Shown: piece after piece, positions 6,301 through 63,864 of the stretch
Layout of the letters: the number at the start of each line of letters is the position of its first letter
How positions within the stretch are numbered: position 1 is the first letter of the stretch
NCBI RefSeq assembly: GCF_032444005.1
Contig: NC_091289.1
Span: 9,176,001-9,240,000, forward strand
Source: Ranitomeya imitator
Taxonomy: Eukaryota
Length of the DNA: 64,000 nucleotides
Direction: 5' to 3'
The notes under the pieces: model-generated
Databases searched by the model: none
Told to the model about the DNA's origin: nothing
Seen by the model: only the letters and a program-made list of their open reading frames with translations
Program-made: the position numbers and the translations under genes

Positions 6301-9300
6301 ACTAGGGGGAGCACACTACATACAGACTTATACAGTCACCACTAGAGGGAGCTCACTACATACAGATTTATACAGCCACCACTAGGGGGAGATCACTACA
6401 TACAGATTTATACAGCCACCACTAGGGGGAGCACACTACATACAGACTTATACAGTCACCACTAGAGGGAGCTCACTACATACAGACTTATACAGTCACC
6501 ACTAGAGGGAGCTCACTACATACAGATTTATACAGCCACCACTAGGGGGAGCACACTACATACAGACTTATACAGTCACCACTAGAGGGAGCTCACTACA
6601 TACAGATTTATACAGCCACCACTAGGGGGAGATCACTACATACAGATTTATACAGCCACCACTAGGGGGAGATCACTACATACAGATTTATACAGCCACC
6701 ACTAGGGGGAGCACACTACATACAGACTTATACAGTCACCACTAGAGGGAGCTCACTACATACAGATTTATACAGCCACCACTAGGGGGAGCTCACTACA
6801 TTCAGATTTATACAGCCACCACTAGAAGGAGCTCACTATATACAGATTTATACAGCCACCACTAGAGGGAGCTCACTACATACAGACTTATACAGTCACC
6901 ACTAGGGGGAGATCACTACATACAGATTTATACAGCCACCACTAGAAGGAGCTCACTATATACAGATTTATACAGCCACCACTAGAGGGAGCTCACTACA
7001 TACAGACTTATACAGTCACCACTAGGGGGAGATCACTACATACAGATTTATACAGCCCCCACTAGGGGGAGCTCACTATATACAGACTTATACAGTCACC
7101 ACTAGGGGGAGTTCACTACAGATTTATACAGCCACCACATACAGACTTATACAGTCACCACTAGGGGGAGCTCACTACATACAAATTTATACAGCAACCA
7201 CTAGGGGGAGCTCACTACATTCAGATTTATACAGCCACCACTAGAAGGAGCTCACTATATACAGATTTATACAGCCCCCACTAGGGGGAGCTCACTACAT
7301 ACAGACTTATACAGTCACCACTAGGGGGAGTTCACTACAGATTTATACAGCCACCACATACAGACTTATACAGTCACCACTAGGGGGAGCTCACTATATA
7401 CAGATTTATACAGCCACCACTAGGGGGAGCACACTACATTCACATATATACAGCCACCACTAGGGAGAGTTCACTACATACAGACTTATAGTCACCACTA
7501 GGGGGAGTTCACTAGATTTATACAGCCACCACTAGGTGGAGCTCGCTACATACAGATTTATACAGTCACTACTAGGAGGAGCTCACTACATACAGATCTA
7601 TACAGTCACCACTGGGCGGAGCTCACTACGTAGATTTATATACAGCCACCAGTAGAGGGAGCTCACTACATACAGATTTATACAGCCATTATTAGAGGGA
7701 GTGCACTACATATTTTTACAGCCACCACTAGGGGGAGTTCACTAAATATTTATACAGTACCAACCGGGGGAGATCACTACATATTTCTAGTCACCACTAG
7801 GGGGAGCGACATGCAGATGTAAAGAGATCTTGTTGGACTCAATATTAAACACTTGTGTGTTCCTAAGCTTTTGCAGTTCCCTTAGGCTACGTTCACATTT
7901 GCGTTGTGCGATGTTGCGTCGGAGACACAACGCAAACAAAAACGCAACAAAACGCACGCTAAAACGCAGCGTTTTGCGACGCATGCGTCCTTTTTTGCCG
8001 AATTGACGCAAAAAAAATGCAACTTGCTGCGTCCTCTGCGCCCTACGCTTGGGGCAGAAAAAACGCATGCATCGCAAAACGCAGCAGAACGCATGTCTAT
8101 GCGCCCCCCATGTTAAATATAGGGGCGCATGACGCATGCGTCGCCGCGGCTGCGTCCGACGCAGCCCGGCAGAACGCAAATGTGAACGTAGCCTTACTGG
8201 TGTGATTTACAAGATCAGCATCCACATGACAGGCCCTCCATGCAGATGCGCCGTGTATCTTTTCATCACTTGTTCCCCGATTCGCAGGTTCCCCGTACAC
8301 TCGCAGCACAGTTGTCACCGCTATCAAATTCACCATATCTGACCAGCCGGCTCCCATTGACCCCCTCCTGAAGAATTGCATCGGTAAGGGCTGACACAAG
8401 ACTGACACCTAGTGGTCACCAACCTGCATTACAAGTGTGAACGGAAAACGTAAAGACGACCTGAACTAAAATAGTTTTACCTGCATTTTATTCACAGGCG
8501 ATTTCTTAAAACCCCTCCAGGACTCGGAGCCCAATGTCCGTCGCGTCACTCTGGTCATGTTTAATTCAGCTGCTCACAACAAACCGTCTCTGGTGCGGAA
8601 ACTTCTGAGCAGAGTCCTTCCGCCTGTGTACGAAGAGACCAAAGTACGGAAAGAACTGATCCGTGAGGTGAGGAGACAGTATCAGACTAGCAGTGCAACT
8701 ATCAATGCTCTAAGGGATGATTCTTAACAGCGCCACACCTGTCCTCAGGCTGGGTGTGGTACTGCAGCTCTTCACATCTTTCCATCATTTAATTCATGTG
8801 TTTACGACCTACTGATATTTGTCCGTCTGTGTACCGGGACCCCCCACGGTCAGTGAAAACACTGCTGCAAAATGGGCAGCGCTTGCAGGAGCGTGCAAGG
8901 ACGCATGGACACCACTCTGTGCCGGCCGCTGCGCACTTCAGAATGGTGGGGGGTCCCAGTCCTCAAACCACCACTTAACAGCACATTGTAGCCCCTTTAA
9001 TATAAAAAAAATGTAATTTAATAAGTAACTGCAAGGTATTCGCTGATCTTTGCCGGTATTTTCATGGCAGGTGGAGATGGGCCCATTCAAGCACACGGTG
9101 GACGACGGCCTGGATGTCCGGAAGGCGGCGTTCGAGTGCATGTACACGCTGCTGGAGAGCTGCCTGGACCAGCTGGACATCTACGAATATCTGAACCACG
9201 TGGAGGACGGACTGAAAGATCACTACGACATTAGGGTAACTGAGCCGCGGCTTCCATACAGCCCAGAAATCATCCGACATGACCCGTGAAGGGCGACTTG

Positions 9301-9858
9301 TCTGCACCACGAAAGCCTTCTCGGCCCATCACTCTACTTGTTTTGCAGATGCTCACCTTCATCATCCTCACCCGTTTGGCTACTCTGTGCCCCAGTGCCG
9401 TTCTGCAGCGCCTGGACCAGCTCATCGAACCCCTTAGAGCCACGTGCACCACCAAGGTATGGCCACTGGTAATAACCAGTCCAGGAGTGCGCGTGGAGAC
9501 TGGATACATGTCCAGAGATTTTCTCAGCATAGATGGAGTGTAGACCCCTGATGTGATGTAACCGGGGCAGAACAGTCAGCCCGATCATTGTCCCTCCTAA
9601 TGATACATAATATTGTCCTTCTGCTCGCAGGTAAAGGCTGGCTCCGTGAAGCAGGAGTTCGAGAAGCAGGATGAGCTGAAGCGCTCGGCTATGAGAACCA
9701 TCACTGCGCTGCTCACAATCCCGGAGGTGGAGACCAGTCACAGCATGGCCGAGTTCCTGATGCAGATCAGAGCCAACCCCGAGCTCTCGTCCCTGATGGA
9801 GAACATCCAGAAAGACTCGGTGACCGCCTGCAGCACGGAGATGATGGACATCAGCTAA
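327..9858 (+). CDS. CAND2: Cullin-associated NEDD8-dissociated protein 2 (HEAT-repeat), 5'-partial, spliced
   Basis: Phase-consistent GT-AG exons: 327-450, 839-1095, 1179-1421, 3682-3974, 4053-4194, 4273-5766 (1494 nt), 8288-8383, 8498-8667, 9071-9235, 9349-9456, 9631-9858 (TAA). Peptides include [58 protein letters not shown] and [24 protein letters not shown]2 rather than CAND1 is supported by DIRM/RLAT/LIEP/KAGS/IPEV residues and by adjacency to RPL32. AATAAA at 10008-10013. Confidence 0.93.
1434..3655. repeat. 35-bp minisatellite, ~60 copies, CAND2 intron
   Basis: Unit aatactgcccctatgtacaagaatataactactat; begins about 12 nt after the donor at 1422. Confidence 0.95.
5770..7806. repeat. 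40-bp minisatellite, ~50 copies, each with a CTCF-like motif
   Basis: Unit actagggggagctcactacatacagatttatacagccacc; starts 3 nt after the donor at 5767. Confidence 0.95.
7885..8193. mobile_element. PIF/Harbinger-type MITE
   Basis: TIRs GGCTACGTTCACATTTGCGTT / AACGCAAATGTGAACGTAGCC with a TTA/TTA 3-bp TSD. Confidence 0.85.
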
Positions 9859-10487: not shown

Positions 10488-11735
<1,248 letters not shown>

Positions 11736-11783
11736 TTAGATCTTTACTGTCGGTATTTACGGTGACGATCGACGCCATTGCTG

Positions 11784-11918
11784 ACTTGTCGCAGACCAAC
11801 TTCCATAAACTGATATAAGGAACCAGCCATGGAATGGGTATCTGGCTGCAGTGCTCTGCCTCCATGTCCACACGCTGCAAGAGCACAGGCCGCCCCGCAG
11901 ACAAAAGGATGGAGACGC
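11784..11918 (-). ncRNA. SNORA7: H/ACA box snoRNA SNORA7 (ACA7) in RPL32 intron 1
   Basis: Two hairpins. Lower stem GTCTCCAT (11916-11909) pairs with ATGGAGGC (11865-11858); H box AGAGCA at 11857-11852; ACA box at 11789-11787, 3 nt from the 3' end and about 73 nt from the 3' splice site. The 3' pocket strands UACCCAUU and AAGUU are complementary to the conserved 28S segment CAAACUU-U-AAAUGGGUA. Host gene, intron position and sequence match recalled mammalian SNORA7A. Confidence 0.88.
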
Positions 11919-13144
11919 TTACTGTCCGCACGCTGCAAGAGCACAGGCCGCCCCGCAGACAAAAGGATGGAGGCGCTTACTGTCCGCACGCTGCAAGAGC
12001 ACAGGCTGCCCCGCAGACTAAAGGATGGAGGCGCTTACTGTCCGCACGCTGCAAGAGCACAGGCCGCCCCGCAGACTAAAGGATGGAGGCGCTTACTGTC
12101 CGCACGCTGCAAGAGCACAGGCTGCCCCGCAGACTAAAGGATGGAGGCGCTTACTGTCCGCACGCTGCAAGAGCACAGGCCGCCCCGCAGACTAAAGGAT
12201 GGAGGCGCTTACTGTCCGCACGCTGCAAGAGCACAGGCCGCCCCGCAGACAAAAGGATGGAGGCGCTTACTGTCCGCACGCTGCAAGAGCACAGGCCGCC
12301 CCGCAGACAAAAGGATGGAGGCGCTTACTGTCCGCACGCTGCAAGAGCACAGGCCGCCCCGCAGACAAAAGGATGGAAGCGCTTACTGTCCGCACGCTGC
12401 AAGAGCACAGGCTGCCCCGCAGACTAAAGGATGGAGGCGCTTACTGTCCGCACGCTGCAAGAGCACAGGCCGCCCCGCAGACTAAAGGATGGAGGCGCTT
12501 ACTGTCCGCACGCTGCAAGAGCACAGGCTGCCCCGCAGACTAAAGGATGGAGGCGCTTACTGTCCGCACGCTGCAAGAGCACAGGCCGCCCCGCAGACTA
12601 AAGGATGGAGGCGCTTACTGTCCGCACGCTGCAAGAGCACAGGCCGCCCCGCAGACAAAAGGATGGAGGCGCTTACTGTCTGCACGCTGCAAGAGCACAG
12701 GCCGCCCCGCAGACAAAAGGATGGAGGCGCTTACTGTCTGCATGCTGCAAGAGCACAGGCCGCCCCGCAGACAAAAGGATGGAGGCGCTTACTGTCTGCA
12801 TGCTGCAAGAGCACAGGCCGCCCCGCAGACAAAAGGATGGAGGCGCTTACTGTCTGCACGCTGCAAGAGCACAGGCCGCCCCGCACACAAAAGGATAGAG
12901 GCGCTTACTGTCCGCACGCTGCAAGAGCACAGGCCACCCCGCAGACAAAAGGATGGAGGCGCTTACTGTCCGCACGCTGCAAGAGCACAGGCTGCCCCGC
13001 AGACTAAAGGATGGAGACGCTTGCTGTCCGCACGCTGCAAGAGCACAGGCTGCCCCGCAGACAAAAGGATGGAGGCGCTTACTGTCCGCACGCTGCAAGA
13101 GCACAGGCCACAGACTAAAGGATGGAGGCGCTTACTGTCCGCAC
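11865..13144 (-). repeat. 58-bp tandem array (~22 copies) derived from the SNORA7 5' hairpin
   Basis: Plus-strand unit tgtccgcacgctgcaagagcacaggccgccccgcagacaaaaggatggaggcgcttac; the gene-proximal copy forms the snoRNA 5' hairpin. Confidence 0.95.
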
Positions 13145-14166
13145 TAACATACAACATGCCTGGTGGGCCGAGAGCTGGACCCTGCACTGATTACAGGCTC
13201 TCAGCTGCACTGTCAGGGTGAAGCAGCGGCAAACTGGGCCCCCTTCATTCTCAGGGAACCCTAGAGGTCAGGTTACCACCGTTCGTACCGTGATGCCACA
13301 TCCTTGCAACAAGATACCATCTTTTAAAAGGGGTATTCCTATCTAATAGTGATGAGTGAGCATGCTCGAGTGTTAACCCATCAGTATCTCCTTAAGCAGC
13401 TAAGTCATAGACCCTCCAAGTGACCAGTAAAATGTCCGCCATAACCCAGTATTGGTGACCAGTACGGCCGCCTCTTAGGCTGAATGCACCTGGCGCTTAT
13501 CACATGGGCTGGGAATATGGCGGTGTATATACACCAGGGGCCAGAACTGTGCCCCTTTGGCCGGTATACAGTATATACACATTCCTCCTCGGTATAGAAG
13601 AGCAGAGTCTTCTGTGCGACTCCATTGAGAAGTAATCTATAACACGCAGGGTACAATACACCATGGGGGTCTGCGGACATAAGAGCGAGTGAATGTGGCT
13701 GTACCCTATAGATGCAATAAGATGCAACGGCAGGAAAATAAAATCCTGAACTGACTGATCTACGGCGGCTCAGCAAAAATGTACAAAACTGAAGACGAGG
13801 ATCTCAGGTAACATCAGCGAGCCACCTCTTAGTGGGGCCCTAGCGGGTCAGGGATGACGTGATAAAGCACCAGCAGGTGGAGAGAGCCAGGCGCCCAATA
13901 GTAGCCATGCTGCAGGAGAAGGCCCCACAGGAACAATAGTCGCCTCCTCAGCAGGATACTGCAGGGGGGCTGCTCCTATATCGCTCTCAGCTTTCTAGTT
14001 TTTATCTCCTTTCACTTGGTGTTTCATGGCGGCCATTGTTGCTCTGCCTGTGGGGTGCTTTTCCATCCAGCATAGATGCTATGTGGGCACCCAGGCCGCT
14101 GCACTAGCTGATAGTGTCTTCTCAGCAGAGGTTGGCGCCGCACCATTAAGGGAAGGGACCCACTAA

Positions 14167-14435
14167 GTCTACGTTCACATTAGCGTTTTGCGTGTTTGCG
14201 TCGGGCGACGCATGCGTCATGCGCCCCTATATTTAACATGGGGGACGCATGGACATGCGTTGTGCGACGCATGCGGTTTTTTTGCCGCAAGCGTCGGGCG
14301 CAGAAAACACAACAAGTTGCATTTTTCTTGCGTCCAAATTTCGGCAAAAAAGGACGCATGCGTCGCAAAACGCAGCGTTTTTATTTGCGTTGTGTCGCCG
14401 ACGCAGCGGCGCACAACGCAAATGTGAACGTAGCG
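14167..14435. mobile_element. PIF/Harbinger-type MITE, same family as 7885-8193, opposite orientation
   Basis: Ends GTCTACGTTCACATT / AATGTGAACGTAGCG with a TAA/TAA TSD; internal sequence is the reverse complement of the first copy. Confidence 0.8.
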
Positions 14436-14584
14436 TAAGAGCTTTGCCATGACGCAGCAGGGGGCTTCATACAGTCCAATCAGATGATACCCAAGATCCT
14501 TGTGTTCAGTTTTGTACATTTTTGCTGTGCAATTGATTAATGTCAGAGTTTTGGATGTGCCGTCCATGTCTTCTACAGCTATGG

Positions 14585-17030
14585 TGCCCCCTCCACCCCA
14601 CAGGACCTATATATAGCGCCCCCTCTATAGTGCCCATACATAATGCCCCCTCTATAGTGCCCATATATAATGCCCCTCCACCCCACAGGACCTGTATATA
14701 ATGCCCCCTCTATAGTGCCCATATATAATGCCCCTCCACCCCACAGGACCTGTATATAATGCCCCTCCACCCCACAGGACCCGTATATAATGCCCCCTCA
14801 ATATTGCCCATATATAATGCCCCTCCACCCCACAGGACCCGTATATAATGCCCCTCCACCCCACAGGACCCGTATATAGCACCCCTCCACCCCACAGGAC
14901 CCGTATATAGCACCCCTCCACCCCACAGGACCTGTATATAGCACCCCCCTCTGTAGTGCCCATATATAATGCCCCTCCACCCCACAGGACCTGTATATAA
15001 TGCCCCCTCTATAGTGCCCATATATAATGCCCCTCCACCCCACAGGACCCGTATATAGCACCCCTCCACCCCACAGGACCTGTATATAGCACCCCCCTCT
15101 GTAGTGCCCATATATAATGCCCCTCCACCCCACAGGACCTGTATATAATGCCCCCTCTATAGTGCCCATATATAATGCCCCTCCACCCCACAGGACCCGT
15201 ATATAATGCCCCTCCACCCCACAGGACCCGTATATAATGCCCCTCCACCCCACAGGACCCGTATATAATGCCCCTCCACCCCACAGGACCCGTATATAAT
15301 GCCCCTCCACCCCACAGGACCCGTATATAATGCCCCTCCACCCCACAGGACCCGTATATAATGCCCCTCCACCCCACAGGACCCGTATATAATGCCCCTC
15401 CACCCCACAGGACCCGTATATAATGCCCCTCCACCCCACAGGACCCGTATATAATGCCCCTCCACCCCACAGGACCCGTATATAATGCCCCTCCACCCCA
15501 CAGGACCCGTATATAATGCCCCTCCACCCCACAGGACCCGTATATAATGCCCCTCCACCCCACAGGACCCGTATATAATGCCCCTCCACCCCACAGGACC
15601 CGTATATAATGCCCCTCCACCCCACAGGACCCGTATATAATGCCCCTCCACCCCACAGGACCCGTATATAATGCCCCTCCACCCCACAGGACCCGTATAT
15701 AATGCCCCTCCACCCCACAGGACCCGTATATAATGCCCCTCCACCCCACAGGACCCGTATATAATGCCCCTCCACCCCACAGGACCCGTATATAATGCCC
15801 CTCCACCCCACAGGACCCGTATATAATGCCCCTCCACCCCACAGGACCCGTATATAATGCCCCTCCACCCCACAGGACCCGTATATAATGCCCCTCCACC
15901 CCACAGGACCCGTATATAATGCCCCTCCACCCCACAGGACCCGTATATAATGCCCCTCCACCCCACAGGACCCGTATATAATGCCCCTCCACCCCACAGG
16001 ACCCGTATATAATGCCCCTCCACCCCACAGGACCCGTATATAATGCCCCTCCACCCCACAGGACCCGTATATAATGCCCCTCCACCCCACAGGACCCGTA
16101 TATAATGCCCCTCCACCCCACAGGACCCGTATATAATGCCCCTCCACCCCACAGGACCCGTATATAATGCCCCTCCACCCCACAGGACCCGTATATAATG
16201 CCCCTCCACCCCACAGGACCCGTATATAATGCCCCTCCACCCCACAGGACCCGTATATAATGCCCCTCCACCCCACAGGACCCGTATATAATGCCCCTCC
16301 ACCCCACAGGACCCGTATATAATGCCCCTCCACCCCACAGGACCCGTATATAATGCCCCTCCACCCCACAGGACCCGTATATAATGCCCCTCCACCCCAC
16401 AGGACCCGTATATAATGCCCCTCCACCCCACAGGACCCGTATATAATGCCCCTCCACCCCACAGGACCCGTATATAATGCCCCTCCACCCCACAGGACCC
16501 GTATATAATGCCCCTCCACCCCACAGGACCTGTATATAGCACCCCTCCACCCCACAGGACCTGTATATAATGCCCCTCCACCCCACAGGACCTGTATATA
16601 GCACCCCTCCACCCCACAGGACCTGTATATAATGCCCCTCCACCCCACAGGACCTGTATATAGCACCCCTCCACCCCACAGGACCTGTACATAATGCCCC
16701 TCCACCCCACAGGACCTGTATATAGCACCCCTCCGCCCCACAGGACCTGTATATAGCACCCCTCCACCCCACAGGACCTGTACATAATGCCCCTCCACCC
16801 CACAGGACCTGTATATAGCACCCCTCCGCCCCACAGGACCTGTATATAGCACCCCTCCACCCCACAGGACCTGTACATAATGCCCCTCCACCCCACAGGA
16901 CCCGTATATAGCACCCCTCCACCCCACAGGACCCGTATATAGCACCCCTCCACCCCACAGGACCTGTATATAGCACCCCCCTCTATAGTGTCCATATATA
17001 ACGCCACTCCACTTCTATAGCACCCCCTCT
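14585..17030. repeat. 31-bp G/C-skewed minisatellite, ~75 copies, RPL32 intron 1
   Basis: Unit gcccctccaccccacaggacccgtatataat; identical core from about 15180 to 16500, with degenerate flanks. Confidence 0.95.
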
Positions 17031-17199
17031 GCACCTCGGGCCCTGGATATAACACCCTCCGCCGCCAGAGTCCACCTCATATCACCCCGCACTGAGGGGG
17101 CGCCACCAAGCCCTCAGCAAGCCGAGCTATGGGGCTGTCTGCAGGGTCCGCAGTTATCAGTCTGGCCTCCATGCTGGGACTTGTAGTACCACACTCCGC

Positions 17200-17530
17200 T
17201 CCTATCCCGTGCACACACAAGCCGCCATATTCAGCACAGGCCCCGCTGACCCAACACCTCCTATCCCGGCTGTATACAGGGCCCACCAGGGACAAAATAA
17301 CAACGGCTGTCCCCAGTCACACCACCGGCTTACACTGCGGTACCGGCAGGGACGGGAAGGGGACAGGATCCGCGCGGATGACGACAGATTCACTCACCGG
17401 TCCGGAGCGTCCGCCTTCTCCGCAGACAGCCCGAGGAAGAGAGAGCGAGAGGCGCTGCGCGAGCTGAAGAGGAGCCGCGGACTTCCGGCGGAACAGCGCC
17501 ACTGCTATAGCGGCACCCGGCGGTACTGCA
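17200..17530 (-). promoter_or_regulatory. RPL32 CpG-rich TATA-less promoter with ETS/GABP and YY1 motifs
   Basis: CpG-dense. ACTTCCGG (ETS) at 17481-17488 upstream of the TOP start; GCCGCCATATT (YY1-like) at 17221-17231 in intron 1. GABP and YY1 control of rpL32 is established in mammals. Confidence 0.7.
17398..17445 (-). other. RPL32: RPL32 non-coding exon 1 with 5' TOP tract
   Basis: Minus strand reads CTCTCTCTTCCTCGGGCTGTCTGCGGAG...CCG|gtgagt: a pyrimidine-tract start typical of ribosomal-protein genes, similar to the recalled mammalian RPL32 5'UTR, followed by a strong donor. Intron 1 is about 5.7 kb (11711-17397). Confidence 0.85.

Positions 17531-45906: not shown

Positions 45907-63864
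<17,958 letters not shown>

What the first reader, a model, noticed from the sequence alone, without database searches (positions are those of the whole stretch)
11784..13144. A snoRNA hairpin turned into a satellite: ~22 tandem copies of the SNORA7 5' hairpin upstream of the intact snoRNA
Seen: on the RPL32 sense strand each 58-nt unit reads GTAAGC-GCCTCCAT-CCTTTTGT-CTGCGGGGC-GGCCTGT-GCTCTTGCAG-CGTGCGGACA. That is the 5' lower-stem strand, left pocket, the complete upper stem-loop and the right pocket strand of the snoRNA. Only the last copy continues into ATGGAGGC, the H box, the 3' hairpin and the ACA box. Each junction creates ACAGUA, which fits the H-box consensus ANANNA and starts with ACA. 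Most upstream copies carry GCCTCCAT, a perfect complement of the single ATGGAGGC strand, whereas the resident copy has GTCTCCAT (G-U), so upstream copies could out-compete the native stem. The array opens with GTGCGGACA, a 9-nt microhomology that plausibly seeded slippage. Established: intronic H/ACA RNAs mature by exonucleolytic trimming of the intron up to the assembled RNP. Inference: this highly transcribed intron may yield 5'-extended, multi-hairpin SNORA7 forms in 58-nt steps, a dyskerin-loading or decoy RNA, or copy-number-tuned snoRNA output. I know of no described snoRNA-derived minisatellite.
Basis: partly seen in the sequence, partly recalled or inferred. Interest (0 to 1): 0.92.

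Follow-up and report, generated by a model that had tools for sequence, protein, structure and literature searches.

The report
Minisatellite grown from SNORA7 snoRNA hairpin
In a frog's RPL32 gene, 58 bases covering most of the first hairpin of the intronic snoRNA SNORA7 have been copied head-to-tail 21 extra times; the array is real and young, and a close relative lacks it, so it is most likely a tolerated by-product of a very repeat-prone genome rather than a working RNA device.

Summary
A 58-nt x 22.2 array (96% identity) lies at 11865-13144, on the RPL32 sense (minus) strand. It abuts a full-length SNORA7 homolog at 11784-11917 (Rfam E=1.8e-10, 54 bits, below the gathering score of 100). 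That homolog sits in the same pre-ATG RPL32 intron as human SNORA7A.

Each unit is 6 nt of upstream intron plus the 5' hairpin without its 3' basal strand. A GTGCGGACA 9-mer precedes the array and ends every unit, which is the classic slippage-birth signature. A ~7-unit higher-order block shows later unequal exchange.

Public contigs show:
- A related species label has exactly the single-copy form (skip of 1213 nt = the 21 extra units).
- A second label has a differently structured array.
- An independent haplotype of the same species breaks at both array edges.

Function is unsupported. Units alone give no SNORA7 hit, and tandem units fold worse than shuffled sequence. 32% of the window is minisatellite. 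In-silico equilibrium folding does favour upstream copies for the single ATGGAGGC strand, so a cis effect on snoRNA maturation remains testable.

Earlier notes of this scan report histone-signal minisatellites elsewhere in this genome. Verdict: a real, curious, probably neutral minisatellite.

The parts
11784..11917 (-). SNORA7 homolog (H/ACA snoRNA): 5' hairpin 11916-11858, H box AGAGCA 11857-11852, 3' hairpin, ACA box 11789-11787, 3 nt tail
   Evidence: Rfam RF00409 full-length match, 54.4 bits, E=1.8e-10, below gathering score 100. Canonical hairpin-hinge-hairpin-tail fold, -49 kcal/mol. Same host intron as human SNORA7A (PMC9394076).
11865..11922 (-). Resident (22nd) repeat unit: 6 nt of intron (GTAAGC) plus the first 52 nt of the snoRNA. 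Differs from the array consensus at unit positions 8 (T) and 53 (T).
   Evidence: Unit table.
11858..11865 (-). ATGGAGGC, the only 3' strand of the basal stem; all 22 copies of the 5' strand could pair with it
   Evidence: Single occurrence on the minus strand in 11700-13260. Pairing probabilities.
11923..13135 (-). 21 extra tandem units (20 of 58 nt, the distal one 53 nt; 1213 nt in all). A ~7-unit higher-order block is repeated (units 10-16 and 17-22), and the distal units are the most diverged.
   Evidence: TRF. Unit table and lag analysis, with the minimum at lag 7. The skip of exactly 1213 nt in a relative's contig.
13136..13144 (-). GTGCGGACA: the upstream copy of the 9-nt direct repeat that also ends every unit (8/9 match to the resident GTGTGGACA)
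   Evidence: This flank is retained in the single-copy contig of organism C, which covers 13111-13200.
11610..11705 (-). RPL32 exon 2 (carries the ATG), preceded by a polypyrimidine tract and AG 3' splice site; 78 nt downstream of the snoRNA 3' end
   Evidence: [23 protein letters not shown].... Splice joint 11524/11610 in RNA contigs of X16 and X37.
11343..11524 (-). RPL32 exon 3
   Evidence: Pfam Ribosomal_L32e, E=4e-29. Spliced RNA contigs. The lower boundary comes from a contig end or loose end at 11343 and is approximate.
11706..17397 (-). RPL32 intron 1 (inferred, about 5.7 kb). It contains SNORA7, the 58-nt array, a very high-copy dispersed repeat (14134-14460) and a 31-nt satellite (14588-16972).
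   Evidence: The 3' splice site is read from sequence. The donor CCG|GTGAGT at 17398/17397 is read from sequence only.
17398..17445 (-). Candidate RPL32 exon 1 (non-coding, TOP-like CTCTCTCTTCCTCGG start) behind a CpG-rich promoter with a CCGGAAGT site
   Evidence: Sequence and CpG observed/expected 0.64-0.91. No RNA support was obtained, because this lies outside the stretch laid.

Best explanation
This is a young, lineage-specific intronic minisatellite, and its unit happens to be the first 52 nt of the SNORA7 snoRNA plus 6 nt of upstream intron.

Birth (inferred): a 9-nt direct repeat lay 6 nt upstream of the snoRNA (GTGCGGACA) and in the 3' pocket strand of its first hairpin (GTGTGGACA). 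Replication slippage or unequal exchange between these two copies duplicated the 58 nt between them. This is the Haber-Louis / Taylor-Breden route of minisatellite birth.

Growth (shown by internal structure): unequal exchange then expanded the array to 21 extra units, including duplication of a ~7-unit block.

Fate of the RNA (inferred): the array is transcribed as part of RPL32 intron 1. Its units lack the 3' strand of the basal stem and cannot form an H/ACA domain, so they are degraded with the intron. The mature snoRNA is made from the resident copy, which folds locally as it is transcribed.

The array has no function of its own. It is a tolerated by-product of a genome that produces minisatellites at a very high rate.
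For: - Array anatomy: the 9-mer precedes the array and ends each unit. All 21 array units and the flank share C at unit position 53, while the resident copy alone has T there. So the repeated junction descends from the flank copy.
- A relative (organism C, X37) has a 250-nt contig that joins 13200-13111 directly to 11897-11763. It skips 1213 nt, which is exactly the 21 extra units (53 + 20 x 58).
- Organism B (X12) has a different array: a unit-like contig with 10+2-nt deletions at depth 47.5 against about 8 for flanks, and flank contigs that run on into sequence that does not align.
- Organism A run X1 differs from the window at several flank sites, so it is another haplotype. Its contigs break at both array edges, at 11900 and 13080.
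- A higher-order repeat and more diverged edge units are typical of unequal exchange.
- Units are not H/ACA domains: there is no partner strand, no Rfam hit on 11918-13250, and tandem units fold worse than shuffles (z=+2.2 as RNA; z=+2.8 to +3.8 as DNA).
- 16 arrays cover 32% of the 64-kb window.
- The birth models are summarised in PMC3389668.
Against: - Equilibrium folding predicts that upstream perfect GCCUCCAU copies, not the resident G-U copy, pair with AUGGAGGC. The resident keeps 2-6% in most contexts. The array may therefore not be innocuous for snoRNA maturation.
- No RNA data could show what is made from the array. All runs are contigs, and array contigs are too short to be laid.
- The polarity is unresolved: gain in A and B, or collapse in C.
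- The single-copy evidence is one contig at depth 5 in one RNA-like run.
- The copy number of 22 is not independently verified.
Confidence: 0.7

Rival explanations
1. The array has the same neutral mutational origin, but it perturbs SNORA7 biogenesis in cis. Upstream perfect 5' strands capture the single AUGGAGGC strand. That would give either 5'-extended, multi-branched SNORA7 forms in 58-nt steps or a reduced yield of mature snoRNA, so copy number would modulate output as a side effect.
For: With upstream units included, the mean pairing probability of AUGGAGGC with the resident 5' strand falls to 0.02-0.06 (0.39 with two units), and the rest goes to upstream copies. MFE structures use an upstream copy when 1, 3 or 5 upstream units are included; with 2 the resident copy is used. 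18 of 21 upstream copies are perfect complements, while the resident has a G-U pair. The 5' ends of intronic H/ACA RNAs are set by exonuclease trimming up to the RNP (established knowledge).
Against: The advantage per copy is about one G-C versus G-U pair, and co-transcriptional local folding and loop entropy favour the nearest copy. In isolated units the GCCUCC strand is sequestered by pairing with the G-rich upper-stem strand. There are no RNA data. The snoRNA sequence itself is conserved between A, B and C apart from one bulge position, which suggests it stays functional.
Confidence: 0.2
2. The array is a selected functional element: a multi-hairpin H/ACA-like RNA, or a dyskerin-loading or decoy platform, made from the highly transcribed RPL32 intron.
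For: Each unit keeps both pocket strands and the upper stem, and each junction reads ACAGUA, which fits ANANNA. The host gene is very highly expressed (exon depth above 10,000 in RNA contigs).
Against: There is no basal stem, so no PUA-domain binding site as known for H/ACA RNPs. There is no covariance-model hit. The array RNA is less structured than random sequence. A close relative lacks the array, and another has units with 12 nt deleted from the upper-stem region. The 5' hairpin pocket is poorly conserved against the Rfam consensus, unlike the 3' pocket. The genome-wide excess of minisatellites explains its existence.
Confidence: 0.05
3. The array is an assembly artefact: a collapsed or expanded repeat that does not exist at this length.
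For: No long read spanning the array was available. Array depth in X1 could not be read, because variant sites break the contigs into pieces too short to lay.
Against: Contigs from an independent haplotype stop at both edges instead of bridging them, whereas organism C bridges. The ordered variant pattern, the higher-order block and the unique 53-nt distal unit are not what mis-assembly produces. Organism B also has repeat-depth unit contigs.
Confidence: 0.03

Closest known systems
Minisatellite birth by slippage between short direct repeats (Haber & Louis 1998; Taylor & Breden 2000, as summarised in PMC3389668)
   Same: A unit of tens of bases is flanked by a 5-10 bp direct repeat. The array begins with one copy of the short repeat and every unit ends with it. 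Later growth is by unequal exchange.
   Different: Here one copy of the short repeat lies inside a functional snoRNA. The unit is therefore a truncated RNA domain, and the array stays fused to the working gene.
PcP190 satellite DNA of frogs, derived from 5S rDNA (PMC11675491, PMC4201667)
   Same: A tandem repeat in anurans whose unit descends from a small non-coding RNA gene.
   Different: PcP190 is an old, genome-wide, heterochromatic satellite of ~190 bp that includes most of the transcribed region. The present array is a single-locus, 1.3-kb, young minisatellite of a partial snoRNA, still attached to its parent.
Whole-snoRNA duplications: cis-duplication within host genes, tandemly repeated C/D snoRNAs of imprinted loci, H/ACA retrogenes (PMC2653536, PMC1802619)
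   Same: snoRNA sequence multiplied within or near its host gene.
   Different: Those copy complete snoRNAs, often with host exons or by retroposition, and give potentially functional paralogs. Here only about 40% of the snoRNA is copied and no copy is a complete H/ACA domain.
Minisatellites seeded from histone H1/H2B 3'-processing signals in the same genome
   Same: Same genome. The unit is part of a functional RNA signal next to the intact signal. Follow-up agents judged these to be tolerated unstable minisatellites.
   Different: Different source element (a histone stem-loop/HDE region rather than a snoRNA hairpin), and 3' of genes rather than intronic.
Human RPL32 / SNORA7A locus, including the intron-retaining 'RPL32 snoRT' bound by dyskerin (PMC9394076)
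   Same: The same host gene, and the same intron before the initiation codon carries the snoRNA.
   Different: As far as I know, no tandem array of the hairpin has been reported upstream of human SNORA7A.

Membership tests
SNORA7 (Rfam RF00409), for the resident RNA at 11784-11917 | Covariance-model score at or above the curated gathering score | tested here: inconclusive
   54.4 bits against a gathering score of 100, so there is no hit in the default scan. The match is full length (1-140/140) with E=1.8e-10 and is by far the best family.
SNORA7 (Rfam RF00409), for the resident RNA at 11784-11917 | H/ACA architecture: hairpin, H box ANANNA, hairpin, ACA 3 nt from the 3' end | tested here: met
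   AGAGCA at 11857-11852 and ACA at 11789-11787. Two-hairpin MFE fold. Structure line of the model alignment.
SNORA7 (Rfam RF00409), for the resident RNA at 11784-11917 | Conserved host position: the RPL32 intron upstream of the ATG exon | tested here: met
   The snoRNA ends 78 nt upstream of the ATG exon of RPL32. [quoted passage not shown]
SNORA7 (Rfam RF00409), for the resident RNA at 11784-11917 | Conserved guide pocket | tested here: met
   The 3' hairpin pocket strands ACCCAUUCCAU and UGGAAG are identical to the model consensus. The 5' hairpin is conserved only in shape.
SNORA7 (Rfam RF00409), for the resident RNA at 11784-11917 | Complementarity to the 28S rRNA target, and accumulation as a ~134-nt dyskerin-bound RNA | not testable with these tools
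   No rRNA sequence of this organism and no small-RNA reads were available. RNA contigs over the snoRNA have only intron-level depth of about 5.
Minisatellite / VNTR | Head-to-tail repeats of a 10-100 bp unit, many copies | tested here: met
   58 nt x 22.2 copies, 96% identity.
Minisatellite / VNTR | Copy number and structure vary between close relatives | tested here: met
   Organism C has a one-unit form (skip of 1213 nt). Organism B has units with 10+2-nt deletions at about 6 times single-copy depth. Organism A has 22 units. Variation within the species was not tested.
Minisatellite / VNTR | Birth signature: a short direct repeat bounding the unit | tested here: met
   GTGCGGACA lies before unit 1 and at the end of each unit. 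The resident copy has GTGTGGACA.
H/ACA RNA domain, for each repeat unit | A basal stem closing the pseudouridylation pocket, followed directly by an H or ACA box | tested here: not met
   The complement ATGGAGGC occurs once only. ACAGUA fits ANANNA but follows no stem. Unit folds use other pairings.
H/ACA RNA domain, for each repeat unit | Recognisable by a covariance model, and thermodynamically stable | tested here: not met
   No SNORA7 or other H/ACA hit in 11918-13250 at E up to 10. Three units fold with z=+2.2 against shuffles. The complete resident hairpin gives z=-2.2.
ncRNA-gene-derived satellite DNA (PcP190 type) | Genome-wide amplification into long arrays | tested here: not met
   The unit is found only in this array within the window. 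Laid array contigs reach depth 19 in X1 and 47.5 in X12, against about 450,000 for the neighbouring dispersed repeat.

The most novel reading that the evidence does not exclude
The array is a natural series of competitor strands. Species with 1, several and 22 copies of the basal-stem 5' strand upstream of one H/ACA snoRNA would differ in SNORA7 yield, or would make 5'-extended SNORA7 isoforms in 58-nt steps. A minisatellite would then tune or damage the output of a conserved rRNA-modification guide. I found no description of a cis mechanism of this kind for snoRNAs.
Probability: 0.15. Interest if true: 0.65.

Novelty: new variant of a known kind. Interest (0 to 1): 0.4.

Why it matters
As a piece of genome anatomy, this is a clean textbook case of minisatellite birth caught with its ancestral form. 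The pre-expansion (or fully collapsed) one-unit allele, the seeding direct repeat and the expanded array are all visible in close relatives.

It also shows that in this repeat-prone frog genome even part of a conserved, functional snoRNA can be swept into an array without destroying the gene.

If the in-silico stem competition is real in cells, the locus offers a natural copy-number series. That series could test how H/ACA RNPs choose their basal stem and set their 5' end co-transcriptionally. If not, it is a harmless curiosity.

Tried and rejected
1. The default Rfam scan of the whole window found nothing. The SNORA7 match appears only with E-value thresholds.
2. Rfam on the array alone gave only chance-level lncRNA matches and no H/ACA family.
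3. RNA evidence: two run searches found no run on record as RNA, and all runs are kept as contigs. The one read-laying run showed spliced RPL32 mRNA and intron-level contigs over the snoRNA, but nothing readable inside the array. So transcription, ends and any ladder could not be assessed.
4. An independent copy-number estimate from depth failed. Variant sites cut the array into contigs too short to be laid.
5. I tested whether hairpin-forming sequence nucleates minisatellites in this genome, an idea prompted by the histone stem-loop arrays in earlier notes. Across the 16 arrays of the window, unit trimers show no general excess of structure, and the 58-nt array is less structured than shuffles. 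The idea is rejected.
6. A first exon 1 candidate at about 13826-13867 was dropped. No RNA contig lies there, and a much better promoter and exon 1 lie at 17398-17445.
7. ORFs running through the array are periodic artefacts of the repeat, not genes.
8. Literature searches for a snoRNA-derived minisatellite or satellite found none.

Full report
**The observation.** Tandem Repeats Finder reports one array at 11865-13144 with period 58, 22.2 copies, 96% matches, no indels and score 2308.

Read on the minus strand, it consists of a 9-mer (GTGCGGACA, 13144-13136), 21 units (the distal one 53 nt, the others 58 nt) and a 22nd, resident unit that runs on into a complete snoRNA. The 26-nt upper-stem core occurs 21 times, all inside the array, against none expected by chance.

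- 18 of 21 upstream units have GCCTCCAT, while the resident copy has GTCTCCAT.
- ATGGAGGC occurs once on this strand.
- Junctions read ACAGTA, with one ACAGCA.

**The snoRNA.** The default Rfam scan of the window is empty. With E-value thresholds, RF00409 (SNORA7) matches 11784-11917(-) over the whole model (1-140) at 54.4 bits, E=1.8e-10. The next family reaches only 15 bits. The score is below the curated gathering score of 100, so by that yardstick membership is not established.

Three other points support it:
- The RNA folds as hairpin, H box (AGAGCA), hairpin, ACA plus 3 nt.
- The 3' pocket strands are identical to the model consensus.
- It lies 78 nt upstream of the ATG exon of RPL32 (Pfam Ribosomal_L32e). 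Human SNORA7A has the same position, in the RPL32 intron before the initiation codon (PMC9394076).

A TIP120-domain (CAND-like) gene ends tail-to-tail next to RPL32. From memory, this is also the human arrangement. I therefore treat the RNA as the SNORA7 ortholog. The 5' hairpin is conserved only in shape.

**Gene context.** Exon 2 is 11610-11705 and exon 3 ends at 11524, with the splice seen in RNA contigs.

Exon 1 was not in the stretch I laid. By sequence, a CpG-rich promoter carries a CCGGAAGT site, a TOP-like CTCTCTCTTCCTCGG start and the donor CCG|GTGAGT at 17398/17397. This makes intron 1 about 5.7 kb. It holds the snoRNA, the 58-nt array, a very high-copy dispersed repeat and a 2.4-kb 31-nt satellite. 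The array is therefore intronic and on the sense strand. This is an inference from sequence.

**How it arose.** The unit runs from 6 nt upstream of the snoRNA to GGACA in the 3' pocket strand. Its boundaries are set by the 9-nt direct repeat, not by the hairpin.

All 21 array units and the flank 9-mer carry C at unit position 53. Only the resident copy has T. The T appears to be shared by organisms B and C, since no difference is listed at 11870. So the repeated junction descends from the flank copy, as expected if exchange between the two 9-mers made the first duplication. This is the model of Haber & Louis and of Taylor & Breden, summarised in PMC3389668.

Units 10-16 and 17-22 repeat the same variant pattern. 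Unit differences are lowest at lag 7, and the distal units are the most diverged. That points to growth by unequal exchange.

**Comparative evidence (contigs only).**
- Organism C (X37, an RNA-like run with exon depth above 17,000) has a 250-nt contig at depth 5 that joins 13200-13111 to 11897-11763. The skip is 1213 nt, exactly the 21 extra units (53 + 20 x 58). An array would have broken this contig, so C has the one-unit form with the flank 9-mer region.
- Organism B (X12, DNA) has flank contigs that run 242 and 56 letters into sequence that does not align. It also has a 128-nt unit-like contig with 10- and 2-nt deletions in the upper-stem region, at depth 47.5 against about 8 for the flanks. 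That indicates an array of different structure.
- Organism A run X1 differs from the window at flank sites (11441, 13700, 13805), so it is another haplotype. Its contigs stop at 11900 and 13080, the points where repeat words begin.

The array is thus real and lineage-specific. Whether A and B gained it or C lost it cannot be told, because the labels are coded and I have no tree.

**What the array RNA can do.** A unit lacks the basal-stem 3' strand:
- The array alone gives no H/ACA hit.
- Three units fold worse than 199 of 200 shuffles (z=+2.2).
- The complete resident hairpin folds better than shuffles (z=-2.2).

So the units are not H/ACA-like hairpins, and dyskerin loading is unlikely on known requirements (a basal stem plus a box).

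On the other hand, equilibrium folding of the snoRNA with 1-8 upstream units gives the resident 5' strand only 0.02-0.06 of the pairing with AUGGAGGC (0.39 with two units). Upstream perfect copies take the rest. The per-copy advantage is about one G-C versus G-U pair. Kinetics (nearest-neighbour, co-transcriptional RNP assembly) probably favour the resident copy. No RNA data could decide this.

**Base rate.** Sixteen arrays cover 20.6 kb, or 32% of the window. Earlier notes of this scan describe minisatellites seeded from histone 3'-processing signals in the same genome, judged tolerated by-products (unchecked by me). I tested whether hairpin-prone sequence seeds arrays in this window, and it does not.

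**Verdict.** A function is not supported.
- Most likely (0.7): a neutral, young minisatellite.
- 0.2: it perturbs snoRNA maturation in cis.
- 0.05: a selected function.
- 0.03: an assembly artefact.

I found no prior description of a snoRNA-derived minisatellite. The nearest precedents are the 5S-derived PcP190 satellite of frogs and whole-snoRNA duplications.

Noticed in passing
window 14134-14460: A very high-copy dispersed repeat inside RPL32 intron 1. Contig word depth is about 450,000 in X1 and 85,000-300,000 in X12, against 6-8 for flanks. It is CpG-rich (observed/expected 1.1-1.2), gives 'opposite strands' joints (inverted-repeat, MITE-like), and is also present in RNA-like runs.
   Followed up: no
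window 14588-16972: A 31-nt satellite (about 75 copies, 91% identity) also lies inside RPL32 intron 1. With the 58-nt array, tandem repeats make up about 65% of the intron.
   Followed up: no
whole window (arrays at 1, 1434, 5769, 14588, 18700, 20467, 26795, 29560, 33034, 40337, 44534, 46105, 48538, 61527, 61753): 32% of the 64 kb is minisatellite. Some units recur at distant places (35-nt at 1434 and 29560; 86-nt at 1, 26795 and 40337), so those belong to dispersed families. Others look locally born, like the 58-nt array.
   Followed up: partly
window 61753-61933: A 70-nt tandem unit whose trimer folds far better than shuffles on both strands (z=-5.5 and -6.0, DNA parameters). It may be a palindromic or hairpin-forming element.
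   Followed up: no
window 9050-9858 (+): The last exons of a TIP120-domain (CAND1/2-like) gene (Pfam PF08623, E down to 7.5e-28) lie tail-to-tail with RPL32. From memory, CAND2 neighbours RPL32 in human as well.
   Followed up: partly
window 17398-17520 (-): Candidate RPL32 promoter and non-coding exon 1: a CCGGAAGT site, a TOP-like start and a GTGAGT donor. This is a sequence-only call.
   Followed up: partly
window 11441 and 11807: At 11441 (RPL32 exon 3) the window has A, but X1, X12 and X37 have G and X16 has both, so this is a polymorphism. At 11807 (a bulge in the SNORA7 3' hairpin) organisms B and C both have C on the + strand, so the window's A is probably derived.
   Followed up: no
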